Source: Ophelia neglecta (taxonomy: Eukaryota). Taken from it: a DNA stretch of 64,000 nucleotides. Position numbers and translations under genes: made by a program. Below, one piece after another: positions 4,889-59,900 of the stretch. Location: the NCBI GenBank assembly GCA_965285935.1, contig OZ260664.1:101618001-101682000 (forward strand). Direction: 5' to 3'. How positions within the stretch are numbered: position 1 is the first letter of the stretch; each line of letters begins with the position of its first letter. The notes under the pieces were generated by a model. It was not told the origin of the DNA. It saw only the letters and a program-made list of their open reading frames with translations, and ran no database searches.

Positions 4889-5998
4889 TAGAGCCAATGG
4901 TGGTGGACTGGTTTATGGTCACTGGTAATAAAAACTACACTTCACCACTGATATATTGTACACGGTTCAATCAGGTCCGGTCAGAAGTGTACCATGACCA
5001 TACCTTTATATTCACGGATAGGTCGAAGCTCGAGGAGAAAGTGACGGCGGCAGCTGTCGCGCATGCCTTCACCTCCAGGATGCGCCCCCCAATCACAGCT
5101 CCATTTTTACTGCCGAAATAACGGCCATATATTTTGCTCTGGACCATATCATCCAGTCTAGAGACAGAAAATTTGTTATCGCCTCAGACTCAATGTCGCC
5201 CCCTCCAGGCACTAGAAGGGTTTAGCTGGTCTAACCCTTTGGTTCTCTCCCGGCGAGAAACCTTAAATAAAATACTCAAAAGAAGAAAAACTGTTATACT
5301 TCTGAGGGTGCCCAGCCACGTGGGCATCAAAGGCAACGAGGCTGCCGACAAATGTGCAAAAGAGGCACTGGAAGATCCCATCTTCCCAATCAAAATCCCG
5401 TCTTCTGACTTCAAGAGCCCAATAAACCAGTATGGCTGGAAACAATGGCAAACCGCCTGGGACCAGACCATAGAAAACAAACTGCACTCTATCTGCCCCT
5501 CCATACCGAAATCATTTCGACAGCCTCTTGCCTCCCGGAGGGACGACTTGATCATGTCTCGTCTGCGCATCGGCCACTCACATTTTACACACACTCACCT
5601 TCTGAGAAGAGAGGACCCACCTTTTTGTGAGGGCTACCAATGCCAGATTACCATCCAACACATTCTGTTGGAATGTAGCGATTTCGCCGAGGCTAGATAC
5701 CGTTTTTATAAAGTTAACAACCTCAAAACCTTATTTGACAAGGTCTGCCCACAGCAGATCCTTAATTTCTTAAAATCTATAGATCTCTACTACAAAATGT
5801 AGTAGACCTAAAACGTGGAAACCATCTTAAAACATACGAAAGTTTAAGGAACTTTCTTTTATCTATTTATTAAACAACTAACCTTTTATCTCTCTTTACT
5901 AACACTTTTTAGTCAGAAAAACATCTGACCCATCCACGTAGAAGACTTTTTATAAAATAGAACTCAATAACCACTTACTTCTTACTATTATCCCCATA
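4889..5998 (+). mobile_element. I-group (I/Nimb-like) LINE fragment: RNase H plus C-terminal CCHC region, frameshifted
   Basis: FTDRSK, VPSHVGIKGNEAADKCAK, SRLRIGHS, TIQHILLEC motifs; near-identical to 50101-51210. Confidence 0.9.
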
Positions 5999-6786: not shown

Positions 6787-9700
6787 ATGGACAGGGGGAG
6801 AAAGGAACTCCCTGTGTCGGGTTCAAATGCCCCTTCAACATCTGTAGGTAAGCGAAATACTGTGTCCGAGCACAGACCCAGTCCATAGCTCAGAGTCTAC
6901 TGATATATACATTTGAATACGTAATTTAGCCTGTATATATTCGGTTGATCACTTTGCACGTGTTTTAATGTGAGAACTGTTTCAGACAGTGCCTCCGGAC
7001 ATGGGCCGCCATACCCTGACCCAGCAACATGTGAACTAACCGATACACAAAAGTATTTACTTTTAACTTCTGAATGGAAAAAGAAATCCCTCAAGAGCTT
7101 TGACTTTCCTCGGCGGTTAGTATCACATGTATATATGATGCCACACGAGCAATGTATAGAATAAATCAAGCTTAAAACGCGTATTAGGTCAAAGTAAATA
7201 ATTGTCAGTAGTATGATTGTTTTGTTTAATTGGTTGTGTAACAAGAATAGAATGTGATAGCATTTATTAATAACGTCGGGAGACATGAGACACTCGGGCT
7301 GGGGGTGGGGGTCATAGCGATGAGTAGGTTACATTGGGTCTTCTCATAAGCAGCTCATTTACTTAATTTTTATAACATAACATAACAAACACATAAATGT
7401 TTCGCCTGACATTAAGAATAGATGTAATTATTTAAAACTATACCAGAGAACAAAACAGGAATGTAAGTTACTTTGAGAAACGCCAGTTTAAACATAGCTG
7501 GGATGGTGTTTTGGTGGGAGGGGGGGGGGGGGGGGCTGGGGGGGGGGGGCACCGGCCATGGTAAAGGATAAGGATCCTACGTTAATTGGCAATACTGAAT
7601 AATCAGCATATTTTACAAAATTGGGATATTTTTATGCGTTTGTTGGAATATAACTTCATGGATACTGCACTTTTTAGAGCAGGCGAAGGCTAAAAACGAC
7701 AGTGGATACACTATAAACCAAACAAAATATTTAATTAATGTTAATTAATTAACTAGGTACGAAATCACAAGGAATGATGGACCAAGCTCTCATAATTGTG
7801 AGACTAAAACAGGATGCAAATTGTGGCCGTGTTATCATATTAAAGAACAAGCGCTTGCTCCCTCATAAATGCATATACTGATTTATATTATAACATTATT
7901 TGAGACATGAAACTTGGTTTCCTAAAATCAAGTCACCTAACATCCTTTTAAATGGTATTTGTCCTGACCTCTTTTTTTAGGCATTAAACTGACTGAGTCA
8001 GTCAACATTGCAGATATTTATAATACGTGGCTATCCTAAACCTGTTGACCAAGGTTCCTTTAATTAATGCAGGGAAGTGATCTCCTTGCACTGTGGATTC
8101 TTAATGTACTTTAAAACCTGTGAATTAAGACCACCCAAGGGACTGGAAAATGCTGGTCTGATTTTGGAGGTGGTCTGCTTAGACAGGTTGTTAAATATAG
8201 AAAATTTATATCAGGGTCCTCATATTAGTTGTCTGATTTGGCAGGAGGTCTGATTATAGAGGTGGTCTTTAAGACAGGTGTCACTGTATTTATCCACCCA
8301 ACAATATGAGTAGTAATAGTTTAATATCTGTGTTTCAGTAATTACATTTCATCTTGAATGATTTTCTGTCTGCTTGTCATTGTTCAGGCTGCAGGGTAAG
8401 AAAACTATGAAGCTTCAGCCACATTGGCTTACAGACTACCTATGGTTGCGGTATTCAGTGATCGAGAATGCTGTCTACTGTGTTTACTGCCTGCTATTTG
8501 GAAAAGAAGGTCAAACATTCGGTCGGTCTGCAGGTTATAAAGATTGGTCTAACCTGAAGAAGCGTATAGACAGTCATATTAAAGAGGGTTCCCCGCATTA
8601 TCATTGCAAGAATGAGGCTGACACTTATTTATTTCGCAACGTTGGCGCCATGAAAAATGAGAAGGAGGAGGATGTAAACGAGGAGGTGGATTCAATAACA
8701 CTCGAAGACGACCGGTCCGGTTTGATGGAGGACCTCCAGGAAGACAACACAGAGATCAATAGAAAGGTAGGTGGTCTTTACAAGTATACCCTGGGCCCGC
8801 TCCCAGGAAGCAGTCTTAAGGCATCACCGGAATTAAAATCAGGATAGAATTAAAGTGATTATTCGGTTTCAACTTGCTGATATGGGTTTCTGGAATCTGG
8901 AATTTTGTCCTTAACCCAACCATTTTGGTCTTAAACTTAATCTTGGTCAATGGAATCACCAATTAACAAGTTCTCAGTTTATCTAATCCCTAAACTTAAG
9001 ACCGGCTTTAGAAACCAGGCCCTCAAGTTCACCCAACTGTTGCTCCTTGTGAAAATGACATGAATCTACAGTAGTAAATTCCTATGCTTACATAATCTAA
9101 AGAAACATTTTAATCATTTTGTTTACTAGACAAGTAAAAGCATTAATTTTAATTTAATACTCAATGCAAATGTTCCAGATGGCAGTTTGGCAAAAGGCAA
9201 AAGAGTTACCAAAAGAGCAAGTCAACAGATACAGCTAAAATAATACTTCAAAATAAATAAATGCCATGCACAAAGGCCAAGGATAGAAGAGAAAACGGTT
9301 TTATTTCCATTTGTTAGCGGAATGGTAGCATGCAAATGGCAAGTCTCGGCGGCATTACGAAGCTTCGCACACAATTGACATGCAGCATTGTTTTCCATTC
9401 GGAGCTTTGAATTAAATAATGGCCAAATCACTTTAATTTTTAAACTGTACCATTTTCATAATCAGTGCTTGTGTAATTTGGTTGATGGTGCCAATGCTAA
9501 ACGCTGTATAAGCAAAATATTATTAACCAGACAGTCGCTTGATCTTTTTTGATCTGTGTCGAGGTGATCATTCCGATAGCCAACGCCAAAGTCGGACTTC
9601 CCGGAGAGGGAGTATGCTTACAAGCTTAAACACGCCGGTTTTTCTGTCTGGTTCTGACTAGACATGTGAAATTCAACGCAATTCATACCGTTTTCCACAG

Positions 9701-12700
9701 GGTAATCCTCCCTTTAGTCCGAGCCAAGATAATTCATGGTACACTGGTTAAGCAGTGTGACATGACCAATATGTGTACCTTAAGAAAGTAAAATCTAAAG
9801 TGTTGAATTGTATTGTTGCATTTTGCTTTCCATTGGCAATCTTTACCCCTGTCTGATGGGTTAGGTTTCAATAAGTCATTAAAAATATCCATTTTCAGTT
9901 CTCAGTATCAATTGTAGGTCAATTACACGTCACCCATTACTTATGTGGATATGCGTGTTATTCATTATATGATTTGTGTAAAGCTTACTGAAGGAAAATT
10001 GCGCAGAATTCTTATGTCAAAATTAAGACATATTCATTTTCAATTAATAGTTCGAAGTATCAATTGATTCTTTTAGGCGGCCGTTTTAAAGAGATACGAG
10101 CATTTTATCTGACAATTGAAATAAGAACCAAAAATATATCATGTCTCTTGGACAAATCGCAATATTCATCAGCCAAACTGCGTGATAAATGTAAATCTTT
10201 AAGTTTAGGCTACTATTTTTTAAATGCTTTTGAAACAAAATGCACATTAAACGCATGGCATGATAATGAAATTATGACAGAACTTTATAACTATTATTTT
10301 TTAAATAATAAGTGGTCCATAAAAGAAGTTTGATAAGTGTAACCAACAATGCATAAATACAATCTAATTAATTAAATTAATTAATTCTAATTAAACACGT
10401 CTTAAATATATTTAATATGTTTTAATTTTTGATAAAAAGCCAAGGATTTCAATTCTCAATATAGCTCGCAAATATAAAAATGTCAAAGTCAAGTCACTCT
10501 TTAGAATTTGTTGACATGCTTCTTATTAACAAAAATAAGTTTTGTTTGCAATTGCGATAGTGCCTTTCCCATGAACAAAAACGGGAGTAGATGTAAAAGT
10601 TCCTCGCATACTAAACAGAAAGTGGTGTTAAATATCCTCGATATTGCGCTTAGATGGACAGACTTAAATGAAGATTTGTTAGTAATAAAAGTTGAGCAAT
10701 GAAACATGATCATGAATAATGTCAATTTTATTTCAAACAGATTGCCAATCTAACGAACCAACTTTGATGCCAGATAGAGCATAGTTTCTTTTTTGCCCTG
10801 AAAGACTGTGACTGAATAGATTTAATGTTATTGTAGTTTGCATCCTGGCCGGCTGTGGCCTCATGTCCGGGGTAGCATCAACTCCTGACTACCTATATTG
10901 GTCTTTAACGCTTGGTGCCTGAAGAGATGCCACGGTCTCTTGGTTTCATATCATTGATTCCACTGCTAACAAGGTTAATCCATGTCGTCCTACCATAGAT
11001 ATAGAGAATACATATCTATGGTCCTACTAACCTCATCAAGACCTGTAATGGGTTTGTGTTTCAGGAGCTTTTCTCTTGTCTAAGCTAGAGTTTAAGCTTG
11101 GCTCATGCTTGCACAAACAGCCAAAATAAACATTAACAATGGTGTCCGGAGTTGTTCAAGTCGGCCAAGGCAATTTGTATAATTCAAGACCCACTTGTTT
11201 CAAAATAGTTAAATTTGACCGAGAAATTTGCAATAAAACGGCAAGTATGACAGCTGACTGGTATCTGCCGCAATCGAGGGGCGTAGTATCTATGTAAATA
11301 GCAAGTTATCAGAGAGCTTGCCGAGCAATGCGGCCTGCTGCACAATTGCATTCTCACATATCTACCGATATTTCCAAGCAAAAGCAAGACGATTAACAAA
11401 CGTTTGATTAACATATTATGTTGGTGTCATGTTTTGGCATACTGAAACATTCTATGAGTTATCTTTATTAGGTAGATGAACGCTTCAGTTCAAACAGCAG
11501 CCAAGATGGAGATGGAGACACTGGCTCAGACACCGGAGACGAGTGCTACGCTGATGATGATATAGGTGAATTGGACAATAAAACAATAGATAGGTGGAGA
11601 ATGAAACACCTAGAGGAGGAATCTAAACCTGCCTATTATCCCATGCAAGAGGCCATAGCTGAAAAAATAGTCGATAGAATAGAAAGTATTCTTCGGCTAT
11701 ACCATGACAAATGTCTGTCAGACTTCGATGACTTTGAATATCAGATTTATACCGCAAAATTTAATATGTTGGAAGAACAAACTGAAAAGAGGGTGTGTGC
11801 CAGGATGGCAGGATGTTTTCATGACAGTGTGTATCAGGATCCGGCATATGTCAGGGATCTAGCAAAACAAAGGGTTCAAAAATATGTGTTGGCTACAACC
11901 GAAGAGAACAGAAATAAGCAGCTGCTTGGGCTGGCAAAAGCTAAACCGGAGACTTTCTTTCTAATAGTAGCTGATGAGGCTCATTGGGGAGTTGGAAAGC
12001 CGGTTGAAAACGAAACTGGCAAAAAACACATGGCAAATGCGAGCGCTTTGAAAGCTGGGGCACATGACACACTCATCAACTGCTGGACTAATAAATTCCA
12101 GAATGTTATTGTCTTGTTAGTCACTGCTACTAGCTTTAATCTGAAAAGTCAAGATTCCCGACTATTGCATCAACAAGATTTTATCAGGATTCGATCAAAA
12201 GCAAGTAACAAAAATGCAACAGGGAATGACCAGCTGTATTTAGTTACAAAGGAAAGAGCTGTCTATATTGATAATAAAACTGACAAACCAGTCAAAATAG
12301 AGAAGAATAGCGAGGTAATGGAAGATAAATTGCACTGTGTGAAATGGTCTGAGGGGCACCGGGATAAGCTTCTTCAGGGTATGGTGGTTAGACTGCGTGT
12401 ACCAAACATGGAAGGACATGAACCTATATGGTTCAAACAAATATCTAAGAAAACTAGTGGTGAAGTTCAACCGGTCTGCGTGACACATGAGGAAGACGAG
12501 TCTTTGGAACTCATCATGACTGGTAGGGATAGAGAAAATGTCGAAATCAAAGCATACAACAGCAATTGCCAAATGATAGCATACAGAGCCAAACGGTCTA
12601 TAGGTGGTCAGCATCAACTTGGATTTATTGAGGTTAGTACTCTGCAAAAGTTTGAAAAGGGAAATGATGTGTGCAGCAAATTCAGAGTTCACATGATATG

Positions 12701-15700
12701 CGGGGAAGACATTTTAGAGCTTGAAGCGGTCAATGTGACCCATGGATACCTGAAGTATGAAAACAAACAAGAATGCATAGCTTTAGGTCGCCGCCCAACC
12801 GATGAAGGATTTGAAGACCTTGGCCTAGCAATTCATGGCTGCGAGTACACATTCATCGTGGACTATTATGCCGAGCACCACATGCTAAAAGGCGCACAGA
12901 AACAACAAATGCAATACCTATCTTTGAACTTCTTCTACAACACCATGCGCAACACAAAGAAGGACGAACAATTGATCAGAAGTGACAAAGACTACATTAG
13001 TATGATAAAAGGCATGGTGAAGTCACAAAAGATAGATACTAACAATAAAACTATTTTGAATGACACGTTGAATGACTATATGGCCGCTGAATATTCCTAT
13101 TACATATTGATGGAACAGTTATTTTTCCAGTGTAGATTGGAAGCACTTTCCGTTGAGCTCTTTGATGTAAACCCTGGCCAAGCTTTTGAACCTGATTATG
13201 TTAAAACCGTGGATAAATTGATACATGACTTCCACAAGGAATTGTGTAAACACCGGGAGAAGTTACCAAGCTCTGGGAATCAAAATCTTCCCATTGAGGC
13301 TGAAATATTTCAAAAGTGGTATGCATTTTTATGTCAAAGAAGTAGAGATGATTTAAAAATGAAATTGAAAGACCGTGACGATAAAGAAACAGCAAATGCC
13401 TTGATCAGATGTTTGCTTTTCCATGGGTCTTCAGAGATGAATAGTTTAAAATTGTGCCTAAAGGGGTACAGTGCTCATTGTCATGAACTGCTTCAAAGGA
13501 AGTGCAATACTTTTCAGGCCACTAAGACAGACATACTTGCAGAATCAGAAACTTACAGGATTGTTAATAGCGTATGCAGAAAACAAAAGTTGGTTGTAGT
13601 TCGGGTCCACAAAAATATTCGGAAATCTGCAAGGAGCTCTCCCGGAAACAGGTTATACAAGACCATCACCATTGCCAGGGACATTGCCTACGGTAAAACT
13701 TTTGAATTTGAAGTGATACGAGATTTTGGAGAATTCACAGTGAGCACGGTAACAGAAGATGTGACGAGTCAGAAGTACAGAATTCACCGACGACTACAAC
13801 CTGAAATATGCCAATATGAAGATGCCAGGTTTTCAAAGTGTAACAGGGGCCCGCGTGGAGAGCCATGTAATAACTACAAGCCAGTGGCGCCAGATCCCAC
13901 ATGTCAGAACTGTGCTCTTAAGCACACTAGTGACTCTGAAGCGGGGCAATGTTTAGATTACAAACCAGTGGCACCAACTCTCACATGTCAAAACTGTAAC
14001 CACAAACACAAAGTAATCAAGGACTACAATGATCTAAACACCCTACCTTGCATCCTGATTCTTGTTGACAAAGGGAGACTAGGACACACATTTCCAGATA
14101 GTTTCTGTGTACTGGATCAAAGGCAGCAATTCAATTATACCAAAATGATAAGTACCAAAGAAAGGAAGTCTGATTTATATTTGTCCCGCATAATGCAAGA
14201 ACTTGGACGACTCTGTCGCTATGCTTACAAACCTGGACAGATATTACCAAACCATCAGGCGTCATCTTATACTGATCTGCCATATGCTCTGGTTGGGGAA
14301 AAGCTATTCAATTATCTTTTTGAGTCACTAAAAGAAGTTCCTGTGTTTTATGGCTATTTCGCAAAGAAAGGTGACCTAGATGCTTATGTAAAATCCCCAG
14401 CGACAGAGCCAGAGAGGGACGAGGATGACCTTCGTGAAAAGGTTACCAAGTTGGTGGCTAACAATAAAAGTTATGATTCCGGAAACACAAAAAAACACAA
14501 AAACAGGCTGTTACTAGAAGCTGAGCCTCAAATTGGTAAAACAGGCGTTTATCTGAAAACTGTGAGCATATTGAGAAAGAAAATTTGCAAGGAAACGGAA
14601 ATTGAGTATATCGAGCAATACGATTCGTCTGATGAAGAAGATAAAGAGGAAATGATGACAGAACCTTCTCTTCCTGCCACGTATGAAGTAGGAACAACGA
14701 ATGAAAACGCGGACCTATGGAGATATCCTTACTGGAGGGACATGGAATCACAAAAACTCCCAAAAGTGGGACCGGGCAAGTACGATCGTACAATTGGATC
14801 TGCACATTCACCTGGAGGAAAAGAAAAAACTGAAAATTTGTTTCAGAAAGACAGAAAAGGACACAAACAGGAAGGAAGAACCATCGAACACGATTTTGAG
14901 CAAGATCAATTTAAAGCTTACAATTACACCCACAGTTGCCCAAAGTGCAGGATACATGAATTAGGCAGGCAGATCAGTAAACGCGTGAAAATTGAGCCTT
15001 CTGGTAGAATTGATGACTCATTTCATGTGAATGTTAGTATTCCAGATTTGAAAGAATATGAGGATGTACAAACGTTAGTTAACCCAGATGAGTCCCAGAG
15101 AAAAATTACATCACAGACATTAAAAACTGATACATCCCTTGAGAGCTGGATATTTACGCCATCTTACAAAAGGCACAATGATGCTACCGTGAATTACAGA
15201 CATACTATGGTACTCGAAGAGAACAGTGACAAATGTCACTATGTCCACTTCCTAGTGGTGAGGAGGGAAGAGTACCCTCTTTACTGTAGTTACTGGGGAA
15301 GTTCACACGGGATTATAGAGCTGCCTGAAGACATTTCCGTCAAGGGTGATGATGATGTCGTGAAAAAGGTAGATGCCGAAAGCGGCGGCATTGGCTATTC
15401 CCGTCTAGTCATTCAGAGGTTCGCAACACAATTGGGTTGTAAACATATTTTCATGATAGATGATAATGTAATGTCCATTCATGAAATAACCACGCAGTGT
15501 GGTGACGACGGACAGGAGAGAATATTGAGAAAAGGCCGGCATCTACAAATCAAAAATGTTCCTTTTTTCAAAGCTCTGAAGCATATAGAGAACCAACTGT
15601 GCCATCCAAAAGACAAAGCGGACAAAGTCATGCAAATTGTAGACAAAGAAAAGGCATTTGATCATGGTGTGCCATTAGAAGGGCTAGAGGGTTATACCGG

Positions 15701-18700
15701 AAGTTCAGACAAATATGCCGTACTTGGCTGCTTAAAAGTCAGACGAGGCGTCCTTCATGTAAAACAACCATTTAAGAAAACTTATGTGTCTTCTCTCGTT
15801 TTGCTAAACCTGCTCTCACTCAGGGAAAAAAACATCCAATATGATATTAAGGAGAAATCATTCGAAGATGTGCATCTGTGTCAAAGATGCGACGAACGGG
15901 GCTTGTGGTCGTGCAAGTACAACCGATTTGTAATGCGGAAACTGAATTTAAAATCCCACATCATTAGTGATATGTTCTATTGGCCAAAAGATGTGAGGCT
16001 GTCATCATACATTAAAGCAACCCAGAAGCTGCCAGATGAGGAGGATGAAAGAAATAGGCTTCTTAGTTGGGTAGAATCCAAACATCCTCCGTCAAATGTT
16101 CAACAGTACCTGCCTCAGGAAAAAAAGGGTAGCGCGGTAGAAGTATGGTGTAAAAAGTTCAAGTCAACCGTAAAGGACAATGCCCAGTTGCATTTATTGC
16201 TATACCTTGACTCAAATAAGTCACTAGTACAACTCCACGAATACTTCAAAGGTACATGTGGAATTGGTGGTTTTGATCACCACATCATTCTCTTCTCGGA
16301 AGTATTCTGTCGAGCAAATGAATTACTTTGTTACAAAGCCTTTGTTTGTAAACTTATAACGCCTGTGTTTGAAGAACAAACCAAATGTGTTGTGATCTCT
16401 ACTCACAGCATTGAGCACTACACTGTCAGATACATAGCCCTTCACATCACAGGAAAAAGTAAGTAAATTTGATATATAATAACGAATCTAAATGTAATAA
16501 CATATAACTCATTCCATATTGTTCTTCAAATGTATATCATTTGATTTCACTGAATGTTGATCGTCTAACTGTAAATGAATATTGCTATACCTTTGCAGTT
16601 TCTCATCCTCTGGACAATGATGCACTGTTTAATGTCATCGTAACACCCTCAGACTCCACGCCAGCGCAAAAAATTGTAATAATACCCGATTCACCTACAG
16701 AAGGAGAACAAGACAAGCAAGTTTCAAAAGAATCCCATCCATCGCCATCGAGGTAATACACTTTCCAATTATTTCTGCCCGTTTCGTGCGATTATGAAAT
16801 ATCTACATTAAAACAACAACGAACGCAACTGATCCTTATTAAGATCCTCTGACGCCGAAAACCGGATTTCTGCTGAATGAGAATTGCTAATCAGTTACTC
16901 ACATAATCATTTTCCACTACATGTTGTTATTAATGCGAGTTTAAATAAGTCTTCCTCTTCCCAATCCAAATTTAAAAGTGAATCCATCTCTCCTTTACTA
17001 GTTATGTTCCATCTTGCCGGTCCTGGGTATGCCGGCTCAAGGCTGAAAGCAGTGTTCAAATCCACTTCAATACTAAAACACCTGGGAAGTGTTCTACAGA
17101 ATACTCGTAGGCTTTAGTACTTATTATTTCTAAAGGAAAGAGATACAACTTTCTCAAGTCGGGTGTTATACTTACATTACGTAAATAGCCCGTTTTAAAC
17201 TGTAGAGTCATAATCAACGTTCGGTAATTGGAACACCAGGGTTACATCAGACAGAAGACACAAGGTTTTACAAATACCATGGGCCCAAACTCGAGTTGAC
17301 ATGATGGGGAGTGTTTAGGTCATACAGAGCCAAAAGAAACTTTTCCTTAGCTACTTAAAAAAAAAGAAAATAAAAATCGCGAAGCAGCCAACTGGAACCT
17401 TAGTAGAGCAGCTAAAACCCAAAACAAATATGTAAATAGAACGAGAGTGGATGTGATATTATTATCTTCCGCAAAGTGACGGCTTTTTTGTTTTGATTTA
17501 TTGTGAAATGATCTTCCGATGATCACCGACACTCCTATGAAGAGGTTCAATGGTCTGCCCACATACTGGACACCACACTCATTGCAAGTTATTAGAAAAC
17601 TAGTTTTAATCGTATGAAAACAAATAGAAATGGAAGAACTAACTGATTGTGTATTTTTGTGCACAAGCACTGAAAAACTGGTGATACCCCACCACTTCCC
17701 CACCACAACATAAAGACGAGACAGCCATCAATTTTTCGAGAAGTGTGGTACCTGTATGTGGAGACGGCCGCTCTCTGTTTAGGTGCATTGCCGCATAAAA
17801 GCTGTCCACGGCAATTTAAATTGATTAACCCACTTCAAATTCACTTTTGGACATAACATAGGTATATCCGTTGCTATTGAACCAAATCCTAACTACCGCG
17901 GTTTACAATATTAAGTTAGTCCGAGCAATCACCATTTTACAGGACTAGGGAACAAATCGTTGCCTTTACCTATGTTTAGGCATGTATTGTGGAGGAATTG
18001 TACTAGTCATGTCACATTAATAAGGAATCCTTATGTTCTGTCACAAACTCTTTATAGCAATTATGTGTGCAAAACAGTGATAGAAATAATTTAAACTCAG
18101 TTCTTCCAAAGCACACTTGTCTATGTCCTATGTTCACCATTTATTCGTTTGCATGGTTGTTTGACTCTTTGATATATTTTCATGTGGGTCATTTTTTTCT
18201 GTCATGAATAGCAGCCACTGCGCGTTTTTTTCGCAATTCACGCATATAATGTAAGAAAATATTACAGAAACATGCTTTCTTTGACGTCTGATTTTTCCTT
18301 GCAGCAGGTCTGATACCCCCAAACCGACAAGTCTAGGTAATGAATTATTTTTATTTGACCAAAACAGCTATATACAAACTCAAATTAACATATACATTAC
18401 TAAGTCGTCCGGACGCCAACACTGGTTGAGGCTGATTGGTTGCAGGCCCTCCTCTTCATTACAACGCCTTATTAAAGTCAATGAAATAAACTATTATAAA
18501 CATGATTATACATGAGCATAATTAATAATAGTCAGCTTAGAATACAATGTATTTCAACATACATACAGTGCATCCATACATATGTAAACATATCGGAACA
18601 AATGTACATACAAATTGACACATCCATAGAGGTGCATACTATAAAATAGGCATCTAATGTACGACCTTGAGATCAGATGAGGTCATTCAAAGACATAAAT

Positions 18701-19673
18701 GTAAAAACCATAATGCAATCGAAGATACAAAGAAGCAGAAAATTGTTTGCAATCATGCTATAAGCAACACTGAAGTGCCTTCTCTTTAACAAGAATTACC
18801 ACTTAATGCACGAACAGTTGCTTTCTGACAAAGATGAAACAAATTGAACTTATAATTTGATGTATGCTTCCATGTTTTTAATTTCAAGTAGTTAGATATA
18901 TTTTTATATCACTGTGTTTAATAACATTTATTAGACCTTTATGGAATGGATATAGCGCCTATGGCTGGAGCAAGGTTTGTGGTATCGTCATATTTGTACC
19001 AATTCTAATAAGAATGATGGGGTACTGATTGCTATATTTTATGAAAAAGCTTAGGGCACTTCAGTGATGGTTTGCTCGAGAAAAAAATCTCCTGACCAGT
19101 GTGCCATTAGCTCATATTATCATATTAGCTCATTTAGCACACTACTGTGTAATAATCTGTCGAATGTAGGGGGTGCTTGACAAAAAACGGTTGAGAGAAT
19201 GCGCCTGATATTGATTACCAAATACGGATGTCTCACATCCAGGGTATCGCGAGTGCAACATTTAGGGAAAAGAGCCTGGTTTGCTAGACGCTTGTTGATT
19301 TTGCGTTATGTAAATATTAATTAATATTTTTGTTTGATATTTAGTTAAATATAAAACCTCTTCCTTTTTTAAGTCATTTCTTGTTATCATTGGATTCGTT
19401 GTTATTTCAGATGATCAGCAAGATGAAACATTTATCCGTGAGAACTCATGTGTATTATGCCACTCTCCAGCAAGCTTTGAAGAGGCAACATGTTTAAGTG
19501 AGTCAGCACTTGAACAATCAACTGTCGCTGTAGTGCACAACATGCTTTGGGTCCGTTGCATTCGTTGTTCCGGTTGGTGCCACCTGCGATGCTGTCCCAA
19601 ATACTACTCATTTGCCGACTTAGTTCTGATAAACAGAGAAGATAATGGATTTTATTGTACTAATTGTCAATAA
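6787..19673 (+). CDS. Multi-exon GREB1-like gene (~2001 aa): TTF-type Zn finger + circularly permuted SF2 helicase + TAGT/GT-A glycosyltransferase + PHD finger. Exons 6787-6847, 6986-7115, 8388-8766, 11472-16458, 16599-16752, 18305-18336, 19411-19673
   Basis: All six introns are GT..AG with matching phases (1,2,0,1,2,1). Exon lengths 61+130+379+4987+154+32+263=6006 nt give 2002 codons ending at TAA 19671-19673. The start codon is the least certain element. Confidence 0.8.
6986..8766 (+). CDS. Exons 2-3 (6986-7115, 8388-8766): TTF-type zinc finger like the N-terminus of hAT transposases/ZMYM1
   Basis: Spliced peptide FDFPRRLQGKKTMKLQPHWLTDYLWLRYSVIENAVYCVYCLLF...YKDWSNLKKRIDSHIKEGSPH fits the FP..W..W L.YS...A..C..C.LF...W....H....H pattern. 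The phase-2 splice cg|g is conserved in three copies. Confidence 0.82.
8109..8286. mobile_element. TA-flanked pogo/Tc1-mariner-like MITE (copies at 39607-39782, 55489-55665, 61463-61639)
   Basis: TIR CAGT(G/A)AAACCTG..AAGACC / GGTCTT..CAGGT(T/G)TCACTG, mostly TA-flanked; internal ggtctgatt repeats. The left TIR of this copy is decayed. Confidence 0.7.
8793..9022. mobile_element. Harbinger-like MITE in intron 3 (copies ~56172-56401, ~62146-62375)
   Basis: gggcccgctcccaggaagcagtcttaag versus reverse complement of the right end gggcctggtttctaaagccggtcttaag. Superfamily is inferred. Confidence 0.55.
10994..11020. mobile_element. 27-bp micro-MITE CATAGATAT..ATATCTATG
   Basis: 9-bp TIR; 7-bp TSD GTCCTAC (10987-10993, 11021-11027); absent at the paralogous site ~58347. 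Confidence 0.75.
11472..16458 (+). CDS. Giant exon 4: GREB1-like circularly permuted SF2 helicase plus GT-A (TAGT/JGT-like) glycosyltransferase
   Basis: Contains ORF 11571-16466, extended in frame to acceptor ttattAG|11472; donor GTAAGT at 16459. Helicase motifs: LIVADEAHWG (~11973), LLVTAT (~12123), LILVDKGRLGHTFP, MQELGRLCRY (~14196), AEPQIGKTG (~14535). GT-A motifs follow: IFTPSYKRH, HFLVVRREEYPLY, GGIGYSR, FMIDDN (~15459), FEDV (~15864). Confidence 0.88.
16860..18000 (-). mobile_element. Degenerate Penelope-like retroelement remnant (GIY-YIG) in intron 5
   Basis: Minus-strand FLITCNECGVQYVGR resembles the PLE GIY-YIG motif YxIxCxxCxxxYVG. Boundaries are approximate. Confidence 0.5.
18305..18336 (+). 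CDS. 32-nt micro-exon (RSDTPKPTSL) with a NAGNAG acceptor
   Basis: tttttccttgCAG|CAG...CTAG|GTAATG converts phase 2 (end of 16599-16752) to the phase 1 needed by the PHD exon. Confidence 0.68.
19411..19673 (+). CDS. Terminal exon encoding a PHD finger (not in ORF track)
   Basis: After gttatttcAG it reads (D)DQQDETFIRENSCVLC...MLWVRCIRCSGWCHLRC...GFYCTNCQ*, a C4-H-C3 pattern with the PHD W-x-x-C-x2-C-x2-W-x-H-x2-C and F-x-C-x2-C signature. Confidence 0.82.
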
Positions 19674-23642: not shown

Positions 23643-23816
23643 GAACAGCTTGAAGATCATCAAGTGAGGAGATTGGACTTGGGAGACCCCAGCCGATTGA
23701 GGAGGTGGTGGTGACAGACCGTGGTGGTGACAAACCGTCCCAACGACAGCGCTACCGTGATAGTCGTGACTACCAGAAGACCGAATCACACGCCAAAAGG
23801 CCCGGTATGAACAGTA

Positions 23817-24065
23817 TAATGTGCTGGTCATTACGGTTATGTAATGGCCTTCATTGCGGTGGGCGATTGCCTCATTCCGATGCTTACTTAATGGGAGTGG
23901 GTTGGTCCTTTGTCAGCGTGTGTCGACCGCACAGTTTCAACTATATGGGATTAGCTCTGTCGGCTTGGCAGGCCTCGTTTTCATATTCTGGCCGGGCCTG
24001 CCACGTTGTATTCCTCTCCGCGGTCACTCTGGCCCCGGTCAGCAAGGCATGCACTGGCAAATTAC
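23817..24065 (+). repeat. Split direct repeat A1 (=A2 28441-28689)
   Basis: 249 bp; the only difference I saw is GC versus CT in gggcctGCcacg/gggcctCTcacg. Confidence 0.95.
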
Positions 24066-24076
24066 TGGTCTCTAAT

Positions 24077-53984: not shown

Positions 53985-56900
53985 ATGGACCGGGGGAGAA
54001 AGGAACTCCCTGTGTCGGGTTCAAATGCCCCTTCAACATCTGTAGGTAAGCGAAATACTGTGTCAGAGCACAGACCCAGTGCATAGCTCAGAGTCTTAGT
54101 GATCTATACATTTGAATACGTAATTTAGCCTGTATATATTCGGTTGATCACTTTGCATGTGTTTTATGTGAGAACTCTTTCAGACAGTGCCTCCAGACGT
54201 GAGCCGCCATACCCTGACCCAGCAACATGTGAACTTACTGATGAACAAAAGTTTTCACTTTTAACTTCTAAATGGGAAGAGGAACACCTGCGGAACTTTG
54301 ACTTTCTTCCACGGTTAGTCTCACATGTATGATGCCACACGAGCTATGTATAGAATAAATCAAGCTTTAAACCCTATTTAAGGCAAAGTAAATAATTGAC
54401 AGTTGTATGATTGTTTTGTTTAATTGGTTGTGTAACAAGAATATAATGTGATAGCACTTATTAATAACGTCGGGAAACACGTGACACGCGGGCTGGGGGT
54501 GGGGGTAATAGGGATGAGCAGGTTACAGTGGCTCTTCTCATAGTCAGCTCATTTACTTAATTTTTATAAAAACATATATGTTTGGCCTGACATGAAGAAT
54601 AGATGTAATTATATAAAACTATACCAAAGAACAAAATAGAAATGTAAGTTACTTTTGAGAAACGCCAGTTTAAACATAGCTATGATGGTTTTTTGGTGGG
54701 GGGGGGGGGCGGGGGGGGGGGGGCACCGGTCATGGTAAAGGATAAGGATCCTACGTTAATTGTCAATACTGAATAATCAAGCCCTGACTAGCAAAAAAAT
54801 TCCACTTTTTCAATCCACGTGAAATGTAAAAAGGGGCCATTCTACCTTATTTCAAAAACTGAATGACAACATAAGAGTTATATGTGCTTATTGAAACGTT
54901 ACTGATTTCCTGATCTAAATACACAGTTGAGAGCTGATTGTTTTCGCACATCTTGTACAAACTTGATAACGTACAGTATATGGCAGAATATTTTACAAAT
55001 TTGTGATATTTTTATGCGTTTGTTGGAATATAACCTTATAGATACTGCACTTTTTAGAGCAGGCGAAGGCTAAATACGACAGTGGATACACTATAGACCA
55101 AACAATATATTTAATTAATGTTAATTCATTAAATAGGTTCGAAATCACAAGGAATGATGGACCAAGCTCTCATAATTGTGAGACTAAAACAGGATGCAAA
55201 TTGTGGCCGTGTTATCATATTAAAGAACAAGCGCTTGCTCCCTCATAAATGCATATACTGATTTATATTATAATATTATTTGAGACATGAAACTTGGTTT
55301 CCTCAAATCATGTCACCTAACATCCTTTTAAATGGTATTTGTCCTGACCTCTTTTTTTAGGCATTAAACAGACTAAGTCAGTCAACATTGCAGAGATTTA
55401 TAATACGTGGCTATCCTAAACCTGTTGACCAAGGTTCCTTTAATTAATGCAGGGAAGTGATCATCTTGCACTGTGGATTCTTAATCTACAGTAAAACCTG
55501 TGAATTAAGACCCCCCAGGGACTGAAAAATGCTGGTCTGATTTTGGAGGTGGTCTGCTTAGACAGGTTATTAAATATTAAAAATTTATGTCAGGGTCCTC
55601 ATATTAAGTGTCTGAATTGGCAGGTGGTCTGATTATAGAGGTGGTCTTTAAGACAGATGTCACTGTATTTATCCACCCGACAATATGAGTAGTCACAGTT
55701 TAATATCTGTGTTTCAGTAATTACATTTCATCTTGAATGATTTTCTGTCTGCTTGTCATTGTTCAGGCGGCGGGGCAAGAAAACTATGAAGCTTCAGCCA
55801 CATTGGCTTATAGACTACCCATTGTTGCGGTATTCAGTGAGCGAGAATGCTGTCTACTGTGTTTACTGCCGGCTATTTGGAAAAGAAGATCAAACATTCG
55901 GTCGGTCTGCAGGTTATAAAGATTGGTCTAACCTGAAGAAGCGTATAGACAGTCATATTAAAGAGGATTCCCCGCATTATCATTGCATAAATGAGGCTGA
56001 AACTTATTTAAAGACATTTCGCAACGTTGGCGCCATGAAAAATGAGAAGGATGTAAACGAGGAGGTGGTTACAATAACACTCGAAGACGACCAGTCCGAT
56101 TTGATGGAGGACCTCCAGGGAGACAACACAGAGATCAATAGAAAGGTGGGTGGTCTTTACAAGTATACCCTGGGTCCGCTCCCAGGAAGCAGTCTTAGCG
56201 CATCACCTGAATTAAAATCAGGATAGAATTAAAGGGATTATTCGGTTTCAACTTGCTGATATGGGTTTCTGGAATCTGGAGTTTTGTCCTTAACCCGACC
56301 ATTTTGGTCTTAACCTTAATCCTGGTCAATGGAATCACCAATTAACGAGTTCTCAGTTAATCTAATCCCTAAACTTAAGACCGGCTTTAGAAACCAGGCC
56401 CTCAAGTTCACCCAACTGTTGCTCCTTGTGAAAATGACATGAATCTACAATAGTAAATTCTTATGCTTACATAATCCGAAGAAACATTTTTGTTTACTAG
56501 ACAAGTAAAAGCATTCAGTATTAATTTAATACTCAATGCAAATGTTCCAGATGGCAGTTTGGCAAAAGGCCAAAGACTTACCAAAAGAGCAAGTCAACAG
56601 ATACCGCTAATATAATACTTCAAAATAAATAAACACCATGCACAAAGGCCAAAGACAGAAGAGAGAACGGTTTTATTTGCATTTGTTTGCAGAATGGTAG
56701 CATGCAAATGGCAAATCTCAATGGCATTACGAAGCTTCGCACACAATTGACATGCAGCATTGTTTTCTATTCGGAGCTTTGTACTAAATAATGGCCAAAT
56801 CGCTTTAATTTTTATTTAGATTGTTCTTAAATGACAAAAACTGTATCATTTTCATAATCAGTGCTTATGTAATTTGGTTGCTGGTGCCAATGATTAACGC

Positions 56901-59900
56901 TGTTCAAGTTAAAAATAATTAACAAGACAGTCGCTTGATTTTATTTGATCTGTGTCGAGGTGATCATTCCGATAGCCAACGCCAAAGTCGGACTTCCCGG
57001 ACAGGGAGTATGCTTACAAGCTTAAACATGCCGGTTTTTCTGTCTAGTCCTGACTAGACATGTAAAAAATTCAACGCAATTCATACCGTTTTCCACAGGG
57101 TAGGCCTCCCTTTAGTCCGAGCCAAGATAATTCATGGTACACTGGTTTAGCACTGTGACATGACCAATATGTTTACCTTAAGAAAGTAAAATCTGAAGTG
57201 TTCCATTGGCAATCATTACGCCTGTCTGATGGGTAAGGTTTCAATAAGTCATTAAAAATATCCATTTTCGGTTCTCAGTATCAATTGTAGGTCAATTACA
57301 CGTCACCCATTACTTATGTGGATATGGGTGTTATTTATTATATGATTTGTGTAAAGCTTACTGAAGGAAAATTGCGCCGGGGTCATTTTTTTTTTAAATT
57401 AAGACATATTCATTTTCAATTAATAGTTCAAATTATTAATTGATTCTTTTAGGCGGCCGTTTTAAAGAGATATGAGCATTTTATCTGACAATTGAAATAA
57501 GAACCAAAAATAATTCATGTCTCTTGGACAAATCGCAATATTCATCAGCCAAACTGCGTTATAAAAGTAAATCTATATGTTTAGGCTACTATTTTTTAAA
57601 CGCTTTTGAAACAAAATGCACAGTAAACGCATGGCATGATAATGAAATTATGACAGAACTTTATATCTATTATTTTTTAAATAATAAGTGGTTCATAAAA
57701 GAAGTTTGATTAGTGTAACCTACAATGCATAAATACAATCTAATGATGTTAAACACGTCTTTAATATATTTTATATGTTTTAATTTTTGTTAAAAAGCCA
57801 GGGATTTCAATTCTCAATATTGCTCGCAAATATAAAAATGCCAAAGTCAAGTCAATCTTTAGAATTTGTTGACATGCTACTTATTAAAAAAAAAAAAATG
57901 TTTGTAATTGCGATAGTGCCTTTCCCATGAACAAAAACGTGTAGATGTAAAAGTTCCTCGCATACTAAACAGGAAATGGTGTTAAATATCTTTGATAGTG
58001 CGCTTAGATGGACAGACTTAAATGAAGATATGTTAGTAATAAAAGTTGAGCAATGAAACATGATCATGAATAATGTCAATTTTATTTCAAACAGATTGTC
58101 AATCTAACTAACCAACTTTGATGCCAGATAGAGCATAGTTTCTTTTTTGCCCTGAAAGGCTGTGACTGAATAGATTTAATGTTATTGTAGTTTGCAACCT
58201 GGCCGGCTGTGGCCTCATGTCCGGGGTAGCACCAACTCCTTTGTATGACTACCTATATTGGTCTTTAACGCTTGGTGCCTGAAGAGATGCCACGGTCTCT
58301 TGGTTTCATATCATTGATTCCACTGCTAACAAGGTTAATCCATGTCGTCCTGCTAACCTCATCAAGACCTGTAATGAGTTTGTGTTTCGGGAGCTGTTCT
58401 CTTGTCTAAGCTAGAGTTTAAGATTTGTGAGCAAATGGCTGGTTGATAATAAACTGTCACTTCATCTGGGGAAAACTGAATGTATTGTTTTTGGTACAAA
58501 GAAAAGGTTGTCTTAAACTCCCACTTTGAATATTATTTGTAATGGGATAAAAATTAAATGTGTCACCCAAGTAAAATATTTGGGAGGCTTGTTGGACAGT
58601 AATATGAGTGGTGAGGCTATGGGAATTTCAGCTGTTCAAAAAATTAATTCAAGAATTAAATTTTTATTTAGAAAACAGTCATATTTGACACCCTATGTGA
58701 GAAGACTTCTGTGTGGTGCGCTTATTCAGTCTCACTTTGATTATGGCTGTACATTCTGGTTTTATGTTGTGTCTGCGTACACAAAAAAGCGTTTACAGTG
58801 CGCCCAAAACAAGGCTGTTCGTTTTGCTTATGGACTGCATCCCAGGCAGCATTTGTATGAGTCCTTCTTCAAGGAATTGTCATGGCTATCGGTTGAAAAG
58901 AGAGTGGATTTTCTTACTTTATGTCTTGTTTTTAAGTGTGTAAATGGTATAGCGCCTTCTTATATTAGTAATTTTGTTAAAGTGAGTGACACACATGACC
59001 ACTCTACCAGGGCCAGTCAGTATAATTTAATTGTGCCCAAAGCAAATGCCAATTCAGGTCTAAACACCTTTGCATGTACAGGGGCAAGGCTATGGAATGC
59101 CTTGCCTAATAATCTCAAGTGCTTATCTAGTCAGGAGATGTTTAAGTCTGCCTGTAAACAATTTTTGTTGAGCACTTTGTAATTTCTAGGGGGCTTTTTT
59201 TTTCCATATTAGGCTATGAATGTAACCAAATGGATGTGTGTCACTCGCTGCTATTATTTTGTGGTGCTATGTATTGTCGTCCACTCTCTAGTCAAGGGCC
59301 GTAATGGAAATAAGTCCTCATCTGCAGAACTTTTTATGCTCCCTTTTCAGGAGATTGGGAAATGTGATGGTGCCATATATTTATTGTTTTCTGTGATATA
59401 CATTGTATTTTGTACACCGTCTATTTACTTTTTCTGAATAAAATCAAATCAATCAATCAATCAAGCTTGGCACATGCTAGCACATAAAACGGTGTCAGGA
59501 GTTGTTTAAGTCTGCCAAGGCCATTTGTATAATTTAAGATCCAATTGTTTCAAACAAAATACATTTGACCAGGATATTTGCAATAATTCAGCAAGAAAAA
59601 CCACCATCATGACGTCTAAAGTATGACAGCAGACTGGTACCTGCCGTAATCCAGGGGAGTAGTATCTATAAAAATAGCAAGTTATCAGAGAGCTTGCCGA
59701 GCAATTCAGCCTGCTGCACAATTGCATTCTCACATATCTACCGATATTCTCAAGCAAAAGCAATACGATTAACAAACGTTTGATTAACATATTATGTTGG
59801 TGTCATGTTTTGGCATACTGAAGCATTCTATGAGTTATCTTTATTAGGTAGATGAACGCTTCAGGTCAAACAGCAGCCAAAATGGAGATGGAGACACTGG

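What the first reader, a model, noticed from the sequence alone, without database searches (positions are those of the whole stretch)
6787..19673. Candidate chromatin-targeted nucleic-acid glycosylation enzyme: TTF Zn finger-permuted SF2 helicase-GREB1/TAGT glycosyltransferase-PHD finger
Seen: a phase-consistent 7-exon, ~2001-aa model joining four modules, including a PHD exon and a micro-exon absent from the ORF track. Known: GREB1-family proteins combine a circularly permuted SF2 helicase with a TET/JBP-associated GT-A domain related to the kinetoplastid base-J glucosyltransferase; PHD fingers often read histone H3 tails; TTF fingers occur in hAT transposases and bind DNA; vertebrate GREB1/GREB1L, as far as I know, have neither finger. 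Inference: a single-polypeptide reader-motor-writer that could glycosylate oxidised bases (hmU/hmC) or chromatin proteins in an animal. I know no description of this architecture, but could not search for one.
Basis: partly seen in the sequence, partly recalled or inferred. Interest (0 to 1): 0.93.

Follow-up and report, generated by a model that had tools for sequence, protein, structure and literature searches.

The report
GREB1-like helicase-glycosyltransferase gene with finger exons
An invertebrate genome carries about a dozen young copies of a GREB1-like helicase-glycosyltransferase gene that appears to have gained a transposon-type zinc finger, a deubiquitinase domain and a PHD finger; the copy in this window has lost the deubiquitinase, and no RNA data yet confirm the splicing.

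Summary
The 4987-nt core exon matches Pfam cpSF2-GREB1 and TAGT strongly, and its ATPase and DDN motifs are intact.

The gene is not unique. It is one of 12 intact young copies (92-96% identical) in segmental duplications. There is also one older paralogue that has neither finger.

The window copy carries an in-frame 633-nt deletion there. The family plan is therefore [TTF]x1-4, helicase, glycosyltransferase, OTU, PHD.

The 3' exons look coding. Their indels are all multiples of three, one donor shifted without changing phase, and the phase-1 donor over the stop at 16466 is conserved in all five other loci examined, including an annelid.

The TTF link is indirect. The ancestral ATG is out of frame in all ten young copies compared, so an upstream exon seems needed.

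No RNA run exists, so splicing is unproven. The window copy evolves under relaxed constraint. No other family member examined carries these fingers. The substrate is unknown. Another first-stage note found the same family at 89 Mb.

The parts
6787..6847 (+). Exon 1: start codon plus 20 codons. It is a truncated paralogue of the 5' end of the big exon. Donor TAG|GTAAGC, ends in phase 1.
   Evidence: The ATG at 6787 and the donor are conserved in the first unit of the C12 copy and the 89-Mb copies. A TGA lies in frame upstream in these units.
6986..7115 (+). Exon 2 (130 nt), fast-evolving. It ends with an FDFPR motif. Donor GCG|GTTAGT.
   Evidence: It is open in all 8 copies inspected, and the acceptor and GTTAGT donor are conserved. 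Resemblance to the segment before the finger in a locus on contig 2 is weak (E 0.024).
8388..8766 (+). Exon 3: TTF-type (hAT/ZMYM1-like) zinc finger plus an acidic tail. Ends in phase 0.
   Evidence: All 26 genomic copies are 379 or 385 nt long with no stops, and both splice sites are conserved in 26/26. The open frame beyond the donor is broken in about 7 of 26 copies. The exon shows 0.39 changes per site against 0.63 in the upstream flank.
11472..16458 (+). Exon 4 (4987 nt): circularly permuted SF2 helicase plus TAGT GT-A glycosyltransferase. Motif positions: II DEAH 11973-11984, III 12120-12134, VI QxxGRxxR 14196-14219, I GKT 14535-14546, GT DDN about 15459-15467.
   Evidence: The acceptor is ttattag|GTA, directly after an in-frame TAG. 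The donor A|GTAAGT overlaps the apparent stop at 16464-16466.
16599..16752 (+). Exon 5 (154 nt): unconstrained Pro/Ser/acidic linker, entering in phase 1 and leaving in phase 2.
   Evidence: It shows no codon-level constraint. In the four 89-Mb copies a nonsense change also creates a GTAAGT donor 36 nt upstream in the same phase, while the old donor is weakened.
17685..17795 (+). Intronic pseudo-exon: a decayed partial duplicate of the start of the OTU exon, with the catalytic Cys replaced by Ser (GDGRSLFR).
   Evidence: The same fragment, interrupted by stops, lies at the equivalent place in other copies.
18305..18336 (+). Exon 6 (32 nt micro-exon): what remains of a 665-nt OTU deubiquitinase exon after an in-frame 633-nt deletion. 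Both splice sites are kept.
   Evidence: Pfam OTU scores 32-33 bits (cut-off 23.3) in paralogue loci L022 and L016.
19411..19673 (+). Exon 7: PHD-like C4HC3 finger plus the stop codon. Acceptor tttcag|AT, entering in phase 1.
   Evidence: It lies 2.8-3.6 kb downstream of every young copy. pN/pS is 0.46 in frame against 1.0-1.2 in the other frames. A 12-nt deletion in the 89-Mb copies regenerates the AG and keeps the frame.
53985..56145 (+). Unit B: exon 1, exon 2 and TTF exon of the next paralogue. This is the first of two tandem TTF units.
59848..62119 (+). Unit C: an internal three-exon unit (175 + 130 + 379 = 684 nt, in frame) with the big-exon-type acceptor. It precedes a core exon that starts about 1.8 kb beyond the window end.

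Best explanation
What it is. This is a real multi-exon gene of a young, tandemly and segmentally amplified GREB1-like family in a probably lophotrochozoan invertebrate.

How it arose.
- The ancestral gene was one large exon encoding a circularly permuted SF2 ATPase and a TAGT GT-A glycosyltransferase. A conserved phase-1 intron followed, leading to a variable C-terminal exon.
- In this lineage the C-terminal slot was filled by a linker, an OTU deubiquitinase and a PHD finger.
- The original start codon was lost by a frameshift. It was replaced by upstream exons that carry the N-terminal zinc finger of a hAT/ZMYM1-like transposase (1-4 in-frame units).
- The window's copy has one TTF unit and has lost the OTU domain by an in-frame exon deletion.

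Likely mechanism (inferred).
- It is a nuclear enzyme that the TTF finger (DNA) and the PHD finger (histone H3 tail) bring to chromatin.
- The ATPase has intact motifs I, II, III and VI, unlike what is reported for human GREB1. It would remodel or translocate on nucleic acid.
- The GT domain would transfer a sugar from a UDP-sugar to a chromatin-associated substrate. I put a protein Ser/Thr substrate at about 50%, a hydroxymethylated DNA base at about 30%, and something else at about 20%.
- In the full-length paralogues the OTU domain would remove ubiquitin nearby.
- Copy-number expansion, domain gain and loss, and fast evolution suggest a role in genome conflict, such as control of transposons or viruses.

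Shown versus inferred. Shown: domain identities, exon phases, paralogue structure, selection signals. Inferred: splicing, expression, localisation, substrates.
For: Core exon:
- Pfam cpSF2-GREB1 scores 226 bits and TAGT 63.6 bits.
- Motifs DEAH, TAT, QxxGRxxR, GKT and DDN are conserved across the family.

Family:
- 12 intact young copies, 3 broken or partial ones, and one paralogue at about 60% identity.
- The whole stretch 6.6-20.1 kb is co-duplicated.

3' exons:
- The donor A|GTAAGT is identical in all 10 copies compared.
- A phase-1 donor sits at the same codon in the old paralogue, in Paralvinella (whose annotated protein splices there), and in three other contigs. The 'stop' at 16466 is therefore intronic across the family.
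- The chain core exon, e5, OTU exon, PHD exon is in phase, and the phase matches the frame in which Pfam recognises OTU.
- Frame-preserving events: deletions of 633, 12 and 6 nt, and a 36-nt donor shift. Against this, 44 indels lie in introns 4-6 (33 not multiples of three).
- PHD pN/pS is 0.46, against about 1.0-1.2 in the other two frames.
- The OTU catalytic Cys and His are kept in all 9 OTU-bearing copies compared.

5' exons:
- The ancestral ATG at 11476 is out of frame in all 10 young copies, and a TAG abuts the acceptor.
- Yet the peptide DECYADDDIGELD..., upstream of the first in-frame Met, is conserved with the old paralogue and with P0002.
- The TTF exon donor (phase 0) fits the 11472 acceptor (phase 0).
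- All 26 TTF exons are open with conserved splice sites, while the read-through tail decays.
- The three-exon unit is 684 nt long, so tandem copies stay in frame.

Context:
- Other family members carry Ank, caspase or WD40 modules, so accessory modules are gained repeatedly in this family.
Against: - There is no transcript evidence. No RNA run was found, and the runs laid on the locus are DNA, with contigs running straight across the proposed junctions as genomic DNA must.
- The accessory exons are co-duplicated with everything else, so co-occurrence alone proves nothing.
- Exon 5 and the OTU exon show no codon-level constraint (pN/pS 1.16 and 0.87).
- PHD nucleotide diversity is no lower than that of the flanking introns.
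- The C12 copy has lost the TTF exon and would be out of frame from exon 2. Its core ORF is nevertheless intact, so the core may be expressed without the TTF module.
- The window copy's own branch has 19 synonymous and 47 non-synonymous changes (dN/dS about 0.64), close to neutral. It may be decaying.
- Pfam does not recognise either finger.
- The structure models were unusable (pLDDT 40 and 47).
Confidence: 0.6

Rival explanations
1. The helicase-glycosyltransferase core and the 3' OTU/PHD exons form one gene, but the TTF units are not part of it. They would be a separate small upstream gene or inert remnants of a hAT transposon copied along with it. The core would be translated from the internal Met at 11601 or from an unrecognised 5' exon.
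For: - The C12 copy keeps an intact core ORF although its TTF exon is deleted and exon 2 would run into a stop.
- The old paralogue and the homologues from other species have no TTF finger.
- About 230 nt upstream of 11472 are as conserved as the coding sequence, which could mark a promoter.
- The number of TTF units varies from 0 to 4 per gene.
Against: - The N-terminal peptide upstream of Met 11601 is conserved with distant relatives, and the young copies have no in-frame ATG for it.
- An out-of-frame ATG at 11476 would impede scanning to 11601.
- The TTF donor and the 11472 acceptor are phase-compatible and conserved in every copy.
- The tail that a stand-alone TTF ORF would use decays in about 7 of 26 copies.
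Confidence: 0.2
2. The family is functional, but the window's own copy is a decaying paralogue. It has lost the OTU domain and drifts nearly neutrally, so it produces no useful protein.
For: - Its private changes are 19 synonymous and 47 non-synonymous (dN/dS about 0.64), against 0.26-0.34 between OTU-bearing copies.
- It has a 633-nt deletion of the OTU domain.
- Its TTF exon is the most divergent from the other copies.
Against: - The 4987-nt ORF has no stop or frameshift despite 66 private substitutions.
- All catalytic motifs are intact.
- All six splice-site pairs are intact.
- The OTU deletion is in frame. The only other copy that lacks the OTU exon (C7:101.866 Mb, minus strand) also keeps an intact core ORF.
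Confidence: 0.3
3. The whole unit of about 14 kb is the coding cargo of a large mobile element. The TTF finger, helicase and OTU would serve transposition rather than host chromatin biology.
For: - There are many near-identical copies, including one on another chromosome.
- TTF fingers are typical of hAT transposases.
- A weak OTU match lies inside a 2326-aa open frame elsewhere on contig 7.
Against: - The copies sit in same-strand tandem arrays with periods of 50-65 kb and about 200 kb. This is typical of segmental duplication.
- No transposase, integrase or Rep domain lies in the unit.
- The core family is an old, intron-sharing host gene family found across phyla.
Confidence: 0.05

Closest known systems
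Vertebrate GREB1 / GREB1L
   Same: It has a circularly permuted SF2 helicase module followed by a TAGT/Fringe-like GT-A glycosyltransferase. The Pfam families are the same (PMC7968844, PMC6163654).
   Different: - Human GREB1 is described as having a catalytically inactive helicase and its own N-terminal Zn-binding domain (PMC7968844). Here motifs I, II (DEAH), III and VI are intact.
- The N-terminal finger here is a TTF/hAT type on separate exons.
- The C-terminus carries OTU (in paralogues) and PHD.
- Here the core is a single exon and the gene is multi-copy.
Paralvinella palmiformis hypothetical protein LSH36_269g08046 (P0001) and unnamed metagenome or Logan homologues (P0002-P0012)
   Same: These are the nearest sequence relatives (28-44% identity). 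They share the cpSF2 + TAGT core, the acidic N-terminal motif and the phase-1 intron straight after the ...EG[KTH] codon.
   Different: They have no TTF, OTU or PHD in the proteins or in the flank available, which ranges from none to 10 kb. Their C-terminal exons encode acidic low-complexity tails.
Kinetoplastid base-J glucosyltransferase and phage hydroxymethyl-base glycosyltransferases (TAGT relatives)
   Same: They share a homologous GT-A domain (Pfam TAGT; stated in PMC7968844). A TET homologue exists in this genome.
   Different: The TET gene is on another contig, so there is no gene-neighbourhood link. No DNA substrate has been shown for any animal member. The one animal member assayed glycosylates a protein.
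TTF-type zinc finger of ZMYM1-like / DUF4371 hAT transposases
   Same: The W..WL.YS..C-x2-C..H..H pattern is present. Atlas neighbours score 0.93. The exon is 37% identical (E 8e-15) to a finger ORF on contig 2 of the same genome.
   Different: No transposase body follows the finger here. The finger sits on its own exon, followed by an acidic tail and a splice donor.
Other domain-fused GREB1-like proteins (P0023 and P0025 with ankyrin repeats, P0083 with a caspase domain, P0095 with WD40 repeats)
   Same: They have the same core with lineage-specific accessory modules.
   Different: The accessory domains differ. None combines a DNA-binding finger, a deubiquitinase and a PHD finger.

Membership tests
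GREB1-like family (cpSF2-GREB1 + TAGT) | Match to Pfam PF20692 (cpSF2-GREB1) above the gathering score | tested here: met
   226 bits against a cut-off of 26.2, E 1.5e-66.
GREB1-like family (cpSF2-GREB1 + TAGT) | Match to Pfam PF20691 (TAGT) above the gathering score, with the acidic DxD-like motif | tested here: met
   63.6 bits against a cut-off of 27.5. MIDDN aligns with DDN in all 14 relatives aligned.
GREB1-like family (cpSF2-GREB1 + TAGT) | Circular permutation: motifs II, III and VI lie N-terminal to the P-loop (motif I) | tested here: met
   Positions within exon 4: DEAH at aa 168, TAT at aa 217, QxxGRxxR at aa 909, GKT at aa 1022.
Vertebrate GREB1 orthologue | Catalytically inactive helicase, as described for human GREB1 (PMC7968844) | tested here: not met
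   All four ATPase motifs are intact here and in the closest relatives. Activity itself was not assayed.
Vertebrate GREB1 orthologue | The N-terminal Zn-binding domain of GREB1 | not tested
   No tool-supplied vertebrate reference was identified with certainty. The TTF exon found no match in the 154 family proteins.
PHD finger | C4HC3 ligand spacing: C-x2-C...C-x2-C-x4-H-x2-C...C-x2-C, with Trp before the His | tested here: met
   The pattern was read from the sequence at 19449-19667.
PHD finger | Match to Pfam PHD (PF00628) or to solved PHD structures | tested here: inconclusive
   - No Pfam hit at E<1.
- The only PDB sequence hits are PHD fingers (KMT2D E 0.095 and 0.24; BPTF E 0.54).
- Atlas PHD clusters score 0.90-0.91 but share only 153-164 features.
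- The AF2 model has pLDDT 40.
PHD finger | Binding of a histone tail | not testable with these tools
   This needs a peptide array or ITC.
TTF-type zinc finger (hAT / ZMYM1-like N-terminus) | W..WL.YS motif followed by C-x2-C and a His pair, plus kinship with ZMYM1-like/DUF4371 proteins | tested here: met
   - The pattern is present.
- Atlas scores 0.93 with 182-190 shared features.
- BLASTP gives 37% identity and E 8e-15 to a finger ORF on contig 2.
- Pfam found no match.
OTU deubiquitinase | Pfam OTU (PF02338) match with the catalytic Cys and His | tested here: not met
   - The domain is absent from the window copy: a 633-nt deletion leaves a 32-nt exon.
- It is met in paralogues: 32-33 bits against a cut-off of 23.3, and GDGRCLFR and GHFNLL are kept in 9/9.
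DNA-base glycosyltransferase system (JGT-like, TET/JBP-associated) | Genomic or functional association with a TET/JBP dioxygenase, and a DNA substrate | tested here: inconclusive
   One TET homologue exists on contig 8, unlinked to this locus. The substrate cannot be tested here.

The most novel reading that the evidence does not exclude
The family is a lineage-specific, fast-diversifying set of chromatin-targeted enzymes. They would use an active helicase to reach DNA and then glycosylate TET-oxidised bases (5hmC or 5hmU). This would be the first DNA-base glycosylation system in an animal. It would be coupled to local deubiquitination and used to mark or silence transposons or viral DNA.
Probability: 0.1. 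Interest if true: 0.9.

Novelty: new variant of a known kind. Interest (0 to 1): 0.6.

Why it matters
- GREB1 is a clinically important but poorly understood protein. Its ancestral role, and whether any animal member acts on nucleic acid, are open questions.
- This family has an apparently competent ATPase, a DNA-binding finger, a histone-reader finger and, in most copies, a deubiquitinase. That places the GREB1 glycosyltransferase squarely on chromatin and gives a natural system in which to ask what it glycosylates.
- The conserved phase-1 intron after the core exon also explains how the family swaps C-terminal modules (acidic tails, ankyrin, OTU-PHD). It warns that ORF-level gene calls truncate these proteins.
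- If the genes are not expressed as modelled, the finding reduces to a duplicated GREB1-like gene with transposon debris.

Tried and rejected
- RNA evidence. The look-up of sequencing runs returned no RNA run. The three holders are genomic DNA, with even cover over the introns and contigs running across the proposed junctions. No junction could be tested.
- Pfam on every accessory exon and on open frames in 16.5-19.4 kb found nothing for TTF, PHD or OTU in the window copy.
- Single-sequence AlphaFold models of the PHD and TTF exons had pLDDT 40 and 47, too low for a fold search.
- PDB sequence search found nothing for the TTF exon.
- The first nucleotide-diversity profile upstream of 11.2 kb was inflated by non-orthologous tandem units. 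I replaced it with the 26-copy TTF alignment.
- The open frame 6949-7161 taken as a whole looked non-coding, with pN/pS 2.15 and stops. Only its sub-segment 6986-7115 is a candidate exon.
- A donor at 7128 was rejected because it is missing from the other copies.
- Splicing straight from the core exon to the PHD exon is also in phase and cannot be excluded as an isoform.
- The 2013 paper that defined TAGT is not held in the library.
Exons were searched separately by reference, and only exon lengths and phases were computed.
- The N run at 39435-39564 was left alone.

Full report
**1. What is in the window**

The plus strand carries one uninterrupted open frame from 11472 to 16466. It matches Pfam cpSF2-GREB1 (E 1.5e-66, 226 bits) and TAGT (E 3.3e-17, 63.6 bits).

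The motif order is the permuted one:
- DEAH at residue 168 of the exon
- TAT at residue 217
- QxxGRxxR at residue 909
- P-loop GKT at residue 1022
- glycosyltransferase DDN motif at residue 1328

All of these align with the same residues in 14 relatives.

**2.

I rebuilt the seven exons from the splice signals:

| Exon | Coordinates | Length (nt) |
|---|---|---|
| 1 | 6787-6847 | 61 |
| 2 | 6986-7115 | 130 |
| 3 (TTF) | 8388-8766 | 379 |
| 4 (core) | 11472-16458 | 4987 |
| 5 | 16599-16752 | 154 |
| 6 (micro-exon) | 18305-18336 | 32 |
| 7 (PHD) | 19411-19673 | 263 |

The total is 6006 nt, which is 2001 codons plus a stop. Every junction has a GT donor and a pyrimidine-rich AG acceptor in a matching phase.

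I did not send a joined protein to any tool, and the exons were searched one by one by reference.

**3. The finger assignments**

Pfam recognises neither finger.

PHD exon:
- It has the exact C4HC3 spacing, with Trp two residues before the His.
- Its only matches among solved structures are PHD fingers of KMT2D and BPTF, though weakly (E 0.095-0.54).
- Its language-model neighbours are PHD clusters (0.90-0.91).

TTF exon:
- It has the W..WL.YS..C-x2-C..H..H pattern.
- Its neighbours are ZMYM1-like/DUF4371 clusters at 0.93, sharing 182-190 of 256 features.
- It is 37% identical (E 8e-15) to a finger ORF on contig 2 of the same genome.

Single-sequence structure models were too poor to use.

**4. 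It is a gene family, not a single gene**

The window is contig 7, 101.618-101.682 Mb, of a 762-Mb assembly. The core exon has:
- 12 intact young copies, 92-96% identical in protein;
- these lie in two clusters on contig 7 (89.2-89.9 Mb and 101.5-102.07 Mb), plus one copy on contig 12;
- three broken or partial copies;
- one older paralogue at 74.37 Mb, about 60% identical.

The whole stretch 6.6-20.1 kb is duplicated as a block.

The PHD exon lies 2.8-3.6 kb downstream of every young copy, including the one on contig 12.

The TTF exon occurs 26 times, as 1-4 tandem units of about 6 kb in front of each core exon on contig 7. Two further units inside this window (53.9-56.1 kb and 59.8-62.1 kb) belong to the next paralogue, whose core exon starts just beyond the window end. 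The contig-12 copy has lost the TTF exon by deletion.

**5. The micro-exon is a deleted OTU exon**

A first-stage note on the 89-Mb cluster mentioned an OTU domain, so I looked for one.

In the paralogues the two splice sites that bound the 32-nt micro-exon enclose a 665-nt exon. Pfam recognises that exon as OTU (32-33 bits, cut-off 23.3). The catalytic GDGRCLFR Cys and GHFNLL His are present in all nine OTU-bearing copies compared. Twelve loci keep this exon.

The window copy and one other copy (101.866 Mb, minus strand) lack it. In the window the loss is a 633-nt deletion, which removes exactly 211 codons.

The family plan is therefore [exon 1, exon 2, TTF]x1-4, helicase, TAGT, linker, OTU, PHD. 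The window holds an OTU-less variant.

**6. Are the 3' exons really joined to the core?**

Co-duplication proves nothing, because everything in the block is duplicated. Five other observations do bear on it.

(a) The donor A|GTAAGT overlapping the apparent stop codon is identical in all ten copies compared.

(b) A consensus donor sits in phase 1 at the same codon in five other loci. It directly follows ...EG[K/T/H] (...DGT in L067):
- the old paralogue;
- Paralvinella, whose annotated protein is spliced exactly there;
- three other contigs from unrelated samples.

The 'stop' at 16466 is therefore intronic across the family. The endings GKSK*, GTSK* and similar in ORF-level predictions are translated donor sites.

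(c) The chain core (leaves phase 1), exon 5 (leaves phase 2), OTU exon (leaves phase 1), PHD exon is consistent. It also coincides with the frame in which the OTU domain is recognised.

(d) Introns 4-6 carry 44 distinct indels, 33 of them not multiples of three. Exon 5, the OTU exon and the PHD exon carry only indels of 6, 12 and 633 nt. The 12-nt deletion at the PHD acceptor regenerates the AG and keeps the frame.

(e) In the four 89-Mb copies a C>T change puts a stop into exon 5. The same change creates a perfect GTAAGT donor 36 nt upstream, in the same phase. The old donor has meanwhile lost its -1 G.

Codon-level tests are mixed:
- PHD pN/pS is 0.46, against 1.0-1.2 in the other frames.
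- OTU pN/pS is 0.87 and exon 5 is 1.16.
- OTU does change more slowly than the introns: 0.092 against about 0.15 changes per site.

I rate the 3' linkage at about 0.85.

**7. Are the TTF exons joined to the core?**

This is less direct.

Evidence for the link:
- The old paralogue starts with its own in-frame ATG (MNDAG...).
- In all ten young copies compared the equivalent ATG (11476) is shifted out of frame. A TAG lies immediately before the acceptor ttattag|G at 11471/11472.
- The peptide encoded between 11472 and the first in-frame Met (11601) is nevertheless conserved with the old paralogue and with homologues from other species. A coding exon must therefore be supplied from upstream.
- The nearest conserved donor in the right phase is that of the TTF exon.
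- All 26 TTF exons are 379 or 385 nt long and free of stops, with AG and GT conserved 26/26. The open frame beyond the donor is broken in about 7 copies.
- The exon changes at 0.39 per site, against 0.63 in the upstream flank.
- Internal units (175 + 130 + 379 = 684 nt) keep the frame.

Evidence against the link:
- The contig-12 copy lacks the TTF exon and would hit a stop when spliced from exon 2, yet it keeps an intact core.

I rate the 5' linkage at about 0.65.

**8. State of this particular copy**

Between OTU-bearing copies the core has pN/pS of 0.26-0.34. Pairs that include the window copy give 0.44-0.59. On its own branch the window copy has 19 synonymous and 47 non-synonymous changes, about 0.64.

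The ORF, all motifs and all splice sites are intact. Constraint is relaxed, and the copy may be on its way out.

**9. Is the architecture known elsewhere?**

A profile-free HMMER search of 1.84 billion representative proteins gave 340 family members. Among the 154 I fetched:
- none matches the TTF, OTU or PHD exons, and none has a C4HC3 signature;
- some carry ankyrin repeats, a caspase domain or WD40 repeats instead.

Six loci from other species show no such exons in whatever flank was available, from none to 10 kb. Their C-terminal exons are acidic and of low complexity.

The library of papers holds nothing on a GREB1-like protein with these domains. Human GREB1 is described there as an N-terminal Zn-binding domain, an inactive permuted helicase and a GT domain that O-GlcNAcylates ER-alpha (PMC7968844).

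One TET homologue exists in this genome, unlinked to the locus.

**10. Verdict**

Supported by comparative evidence:
- a reader-motor-writer architecture;
- an eraser (deubiquitinase) domain as well in most copies.

Still inference:
- expression;
- splicing;
- localisation;
- the substrate.

No RNA data exist for this organism in the collections available.

The same family was flagged by another first-stage note 12.2 Mb upstream on this contig.

Noticed in passing
window 23700-27932 (+): A GC-rich (55%) retroelement with a reverse-transcriptase ORF (Pfam RVT_1) followed by an ORF with a weak phage-integrase SAM-like match. This looks like a DIRS-like tyrosine-recombinase retrotransposon. Short repeats of 98-99% identity lie at 23814-24065/28437-28689 and 28251-28445/28745-28940.
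   Followed up: partly
window 31923-32984 (-): An intronless 353-aa ORF with an N-terminal hydrophobic segment and a Pfam DUF1647 match (E 4e-16). It lies between two paralogue units.
   Followed up: partly
window 37768-38737: A minisatellite of about 1 kb with a 17-nt unit (also seen at periods of 34 and 221 nt), C-rich on the plus strand, about 80% matches. An assembly gap (N run 39435-39564) follows and was left untouched.
   Followed up: partly
window 4887-5997, 41796-42503, 46299-52965, 58526-59182: Several non-LTR retrotransposon fragments (one RVT_1 match and other LINE-like ORFs by eye), some in tandem sub-repeats. One lies directly upstream of TTF units A and B. Another is inserted between units B and C.
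   Followed up: partly
G000 contig 7, 74.371-74.377 Mb (loci L031/L032): An older paralogue of the core (about 60% identity, 1718-aa frame) with its own in-frame start. It has the same phase-1 GTAAGT donor and acidic low-complexity ORFs downstream, but no TTF, OTU or PHD within 5 kb upstream and 7 kb downstream.
   Followed up: partly
G000 contig 7, 23.8809-23.8814 Mb (-): A weak OTU match (25% identity, E 7e-4) inside a 2326-aa open frame. This could be a relative or the source of the OTU module.
   Followed up: no
L067 (Logan contig of SRR29645012), L034, L035, L033: ORF-level gene calls for this family end a few codons after ...EG[KTH] (...DGT in L067) because they read into a conserved intron. 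Database proteins of this family are therefore systematically truncated at the C-terminus.
   Followed up: yes
proteins P0083, P0095, P0023, P0025: GREB1-like cores are fused to a caspase domain, WD40 propellers or ankyrin repeats in other organisms. This pattern recalls the domain shuffling seen in conflict or immunity genes.
   Followed up: partly
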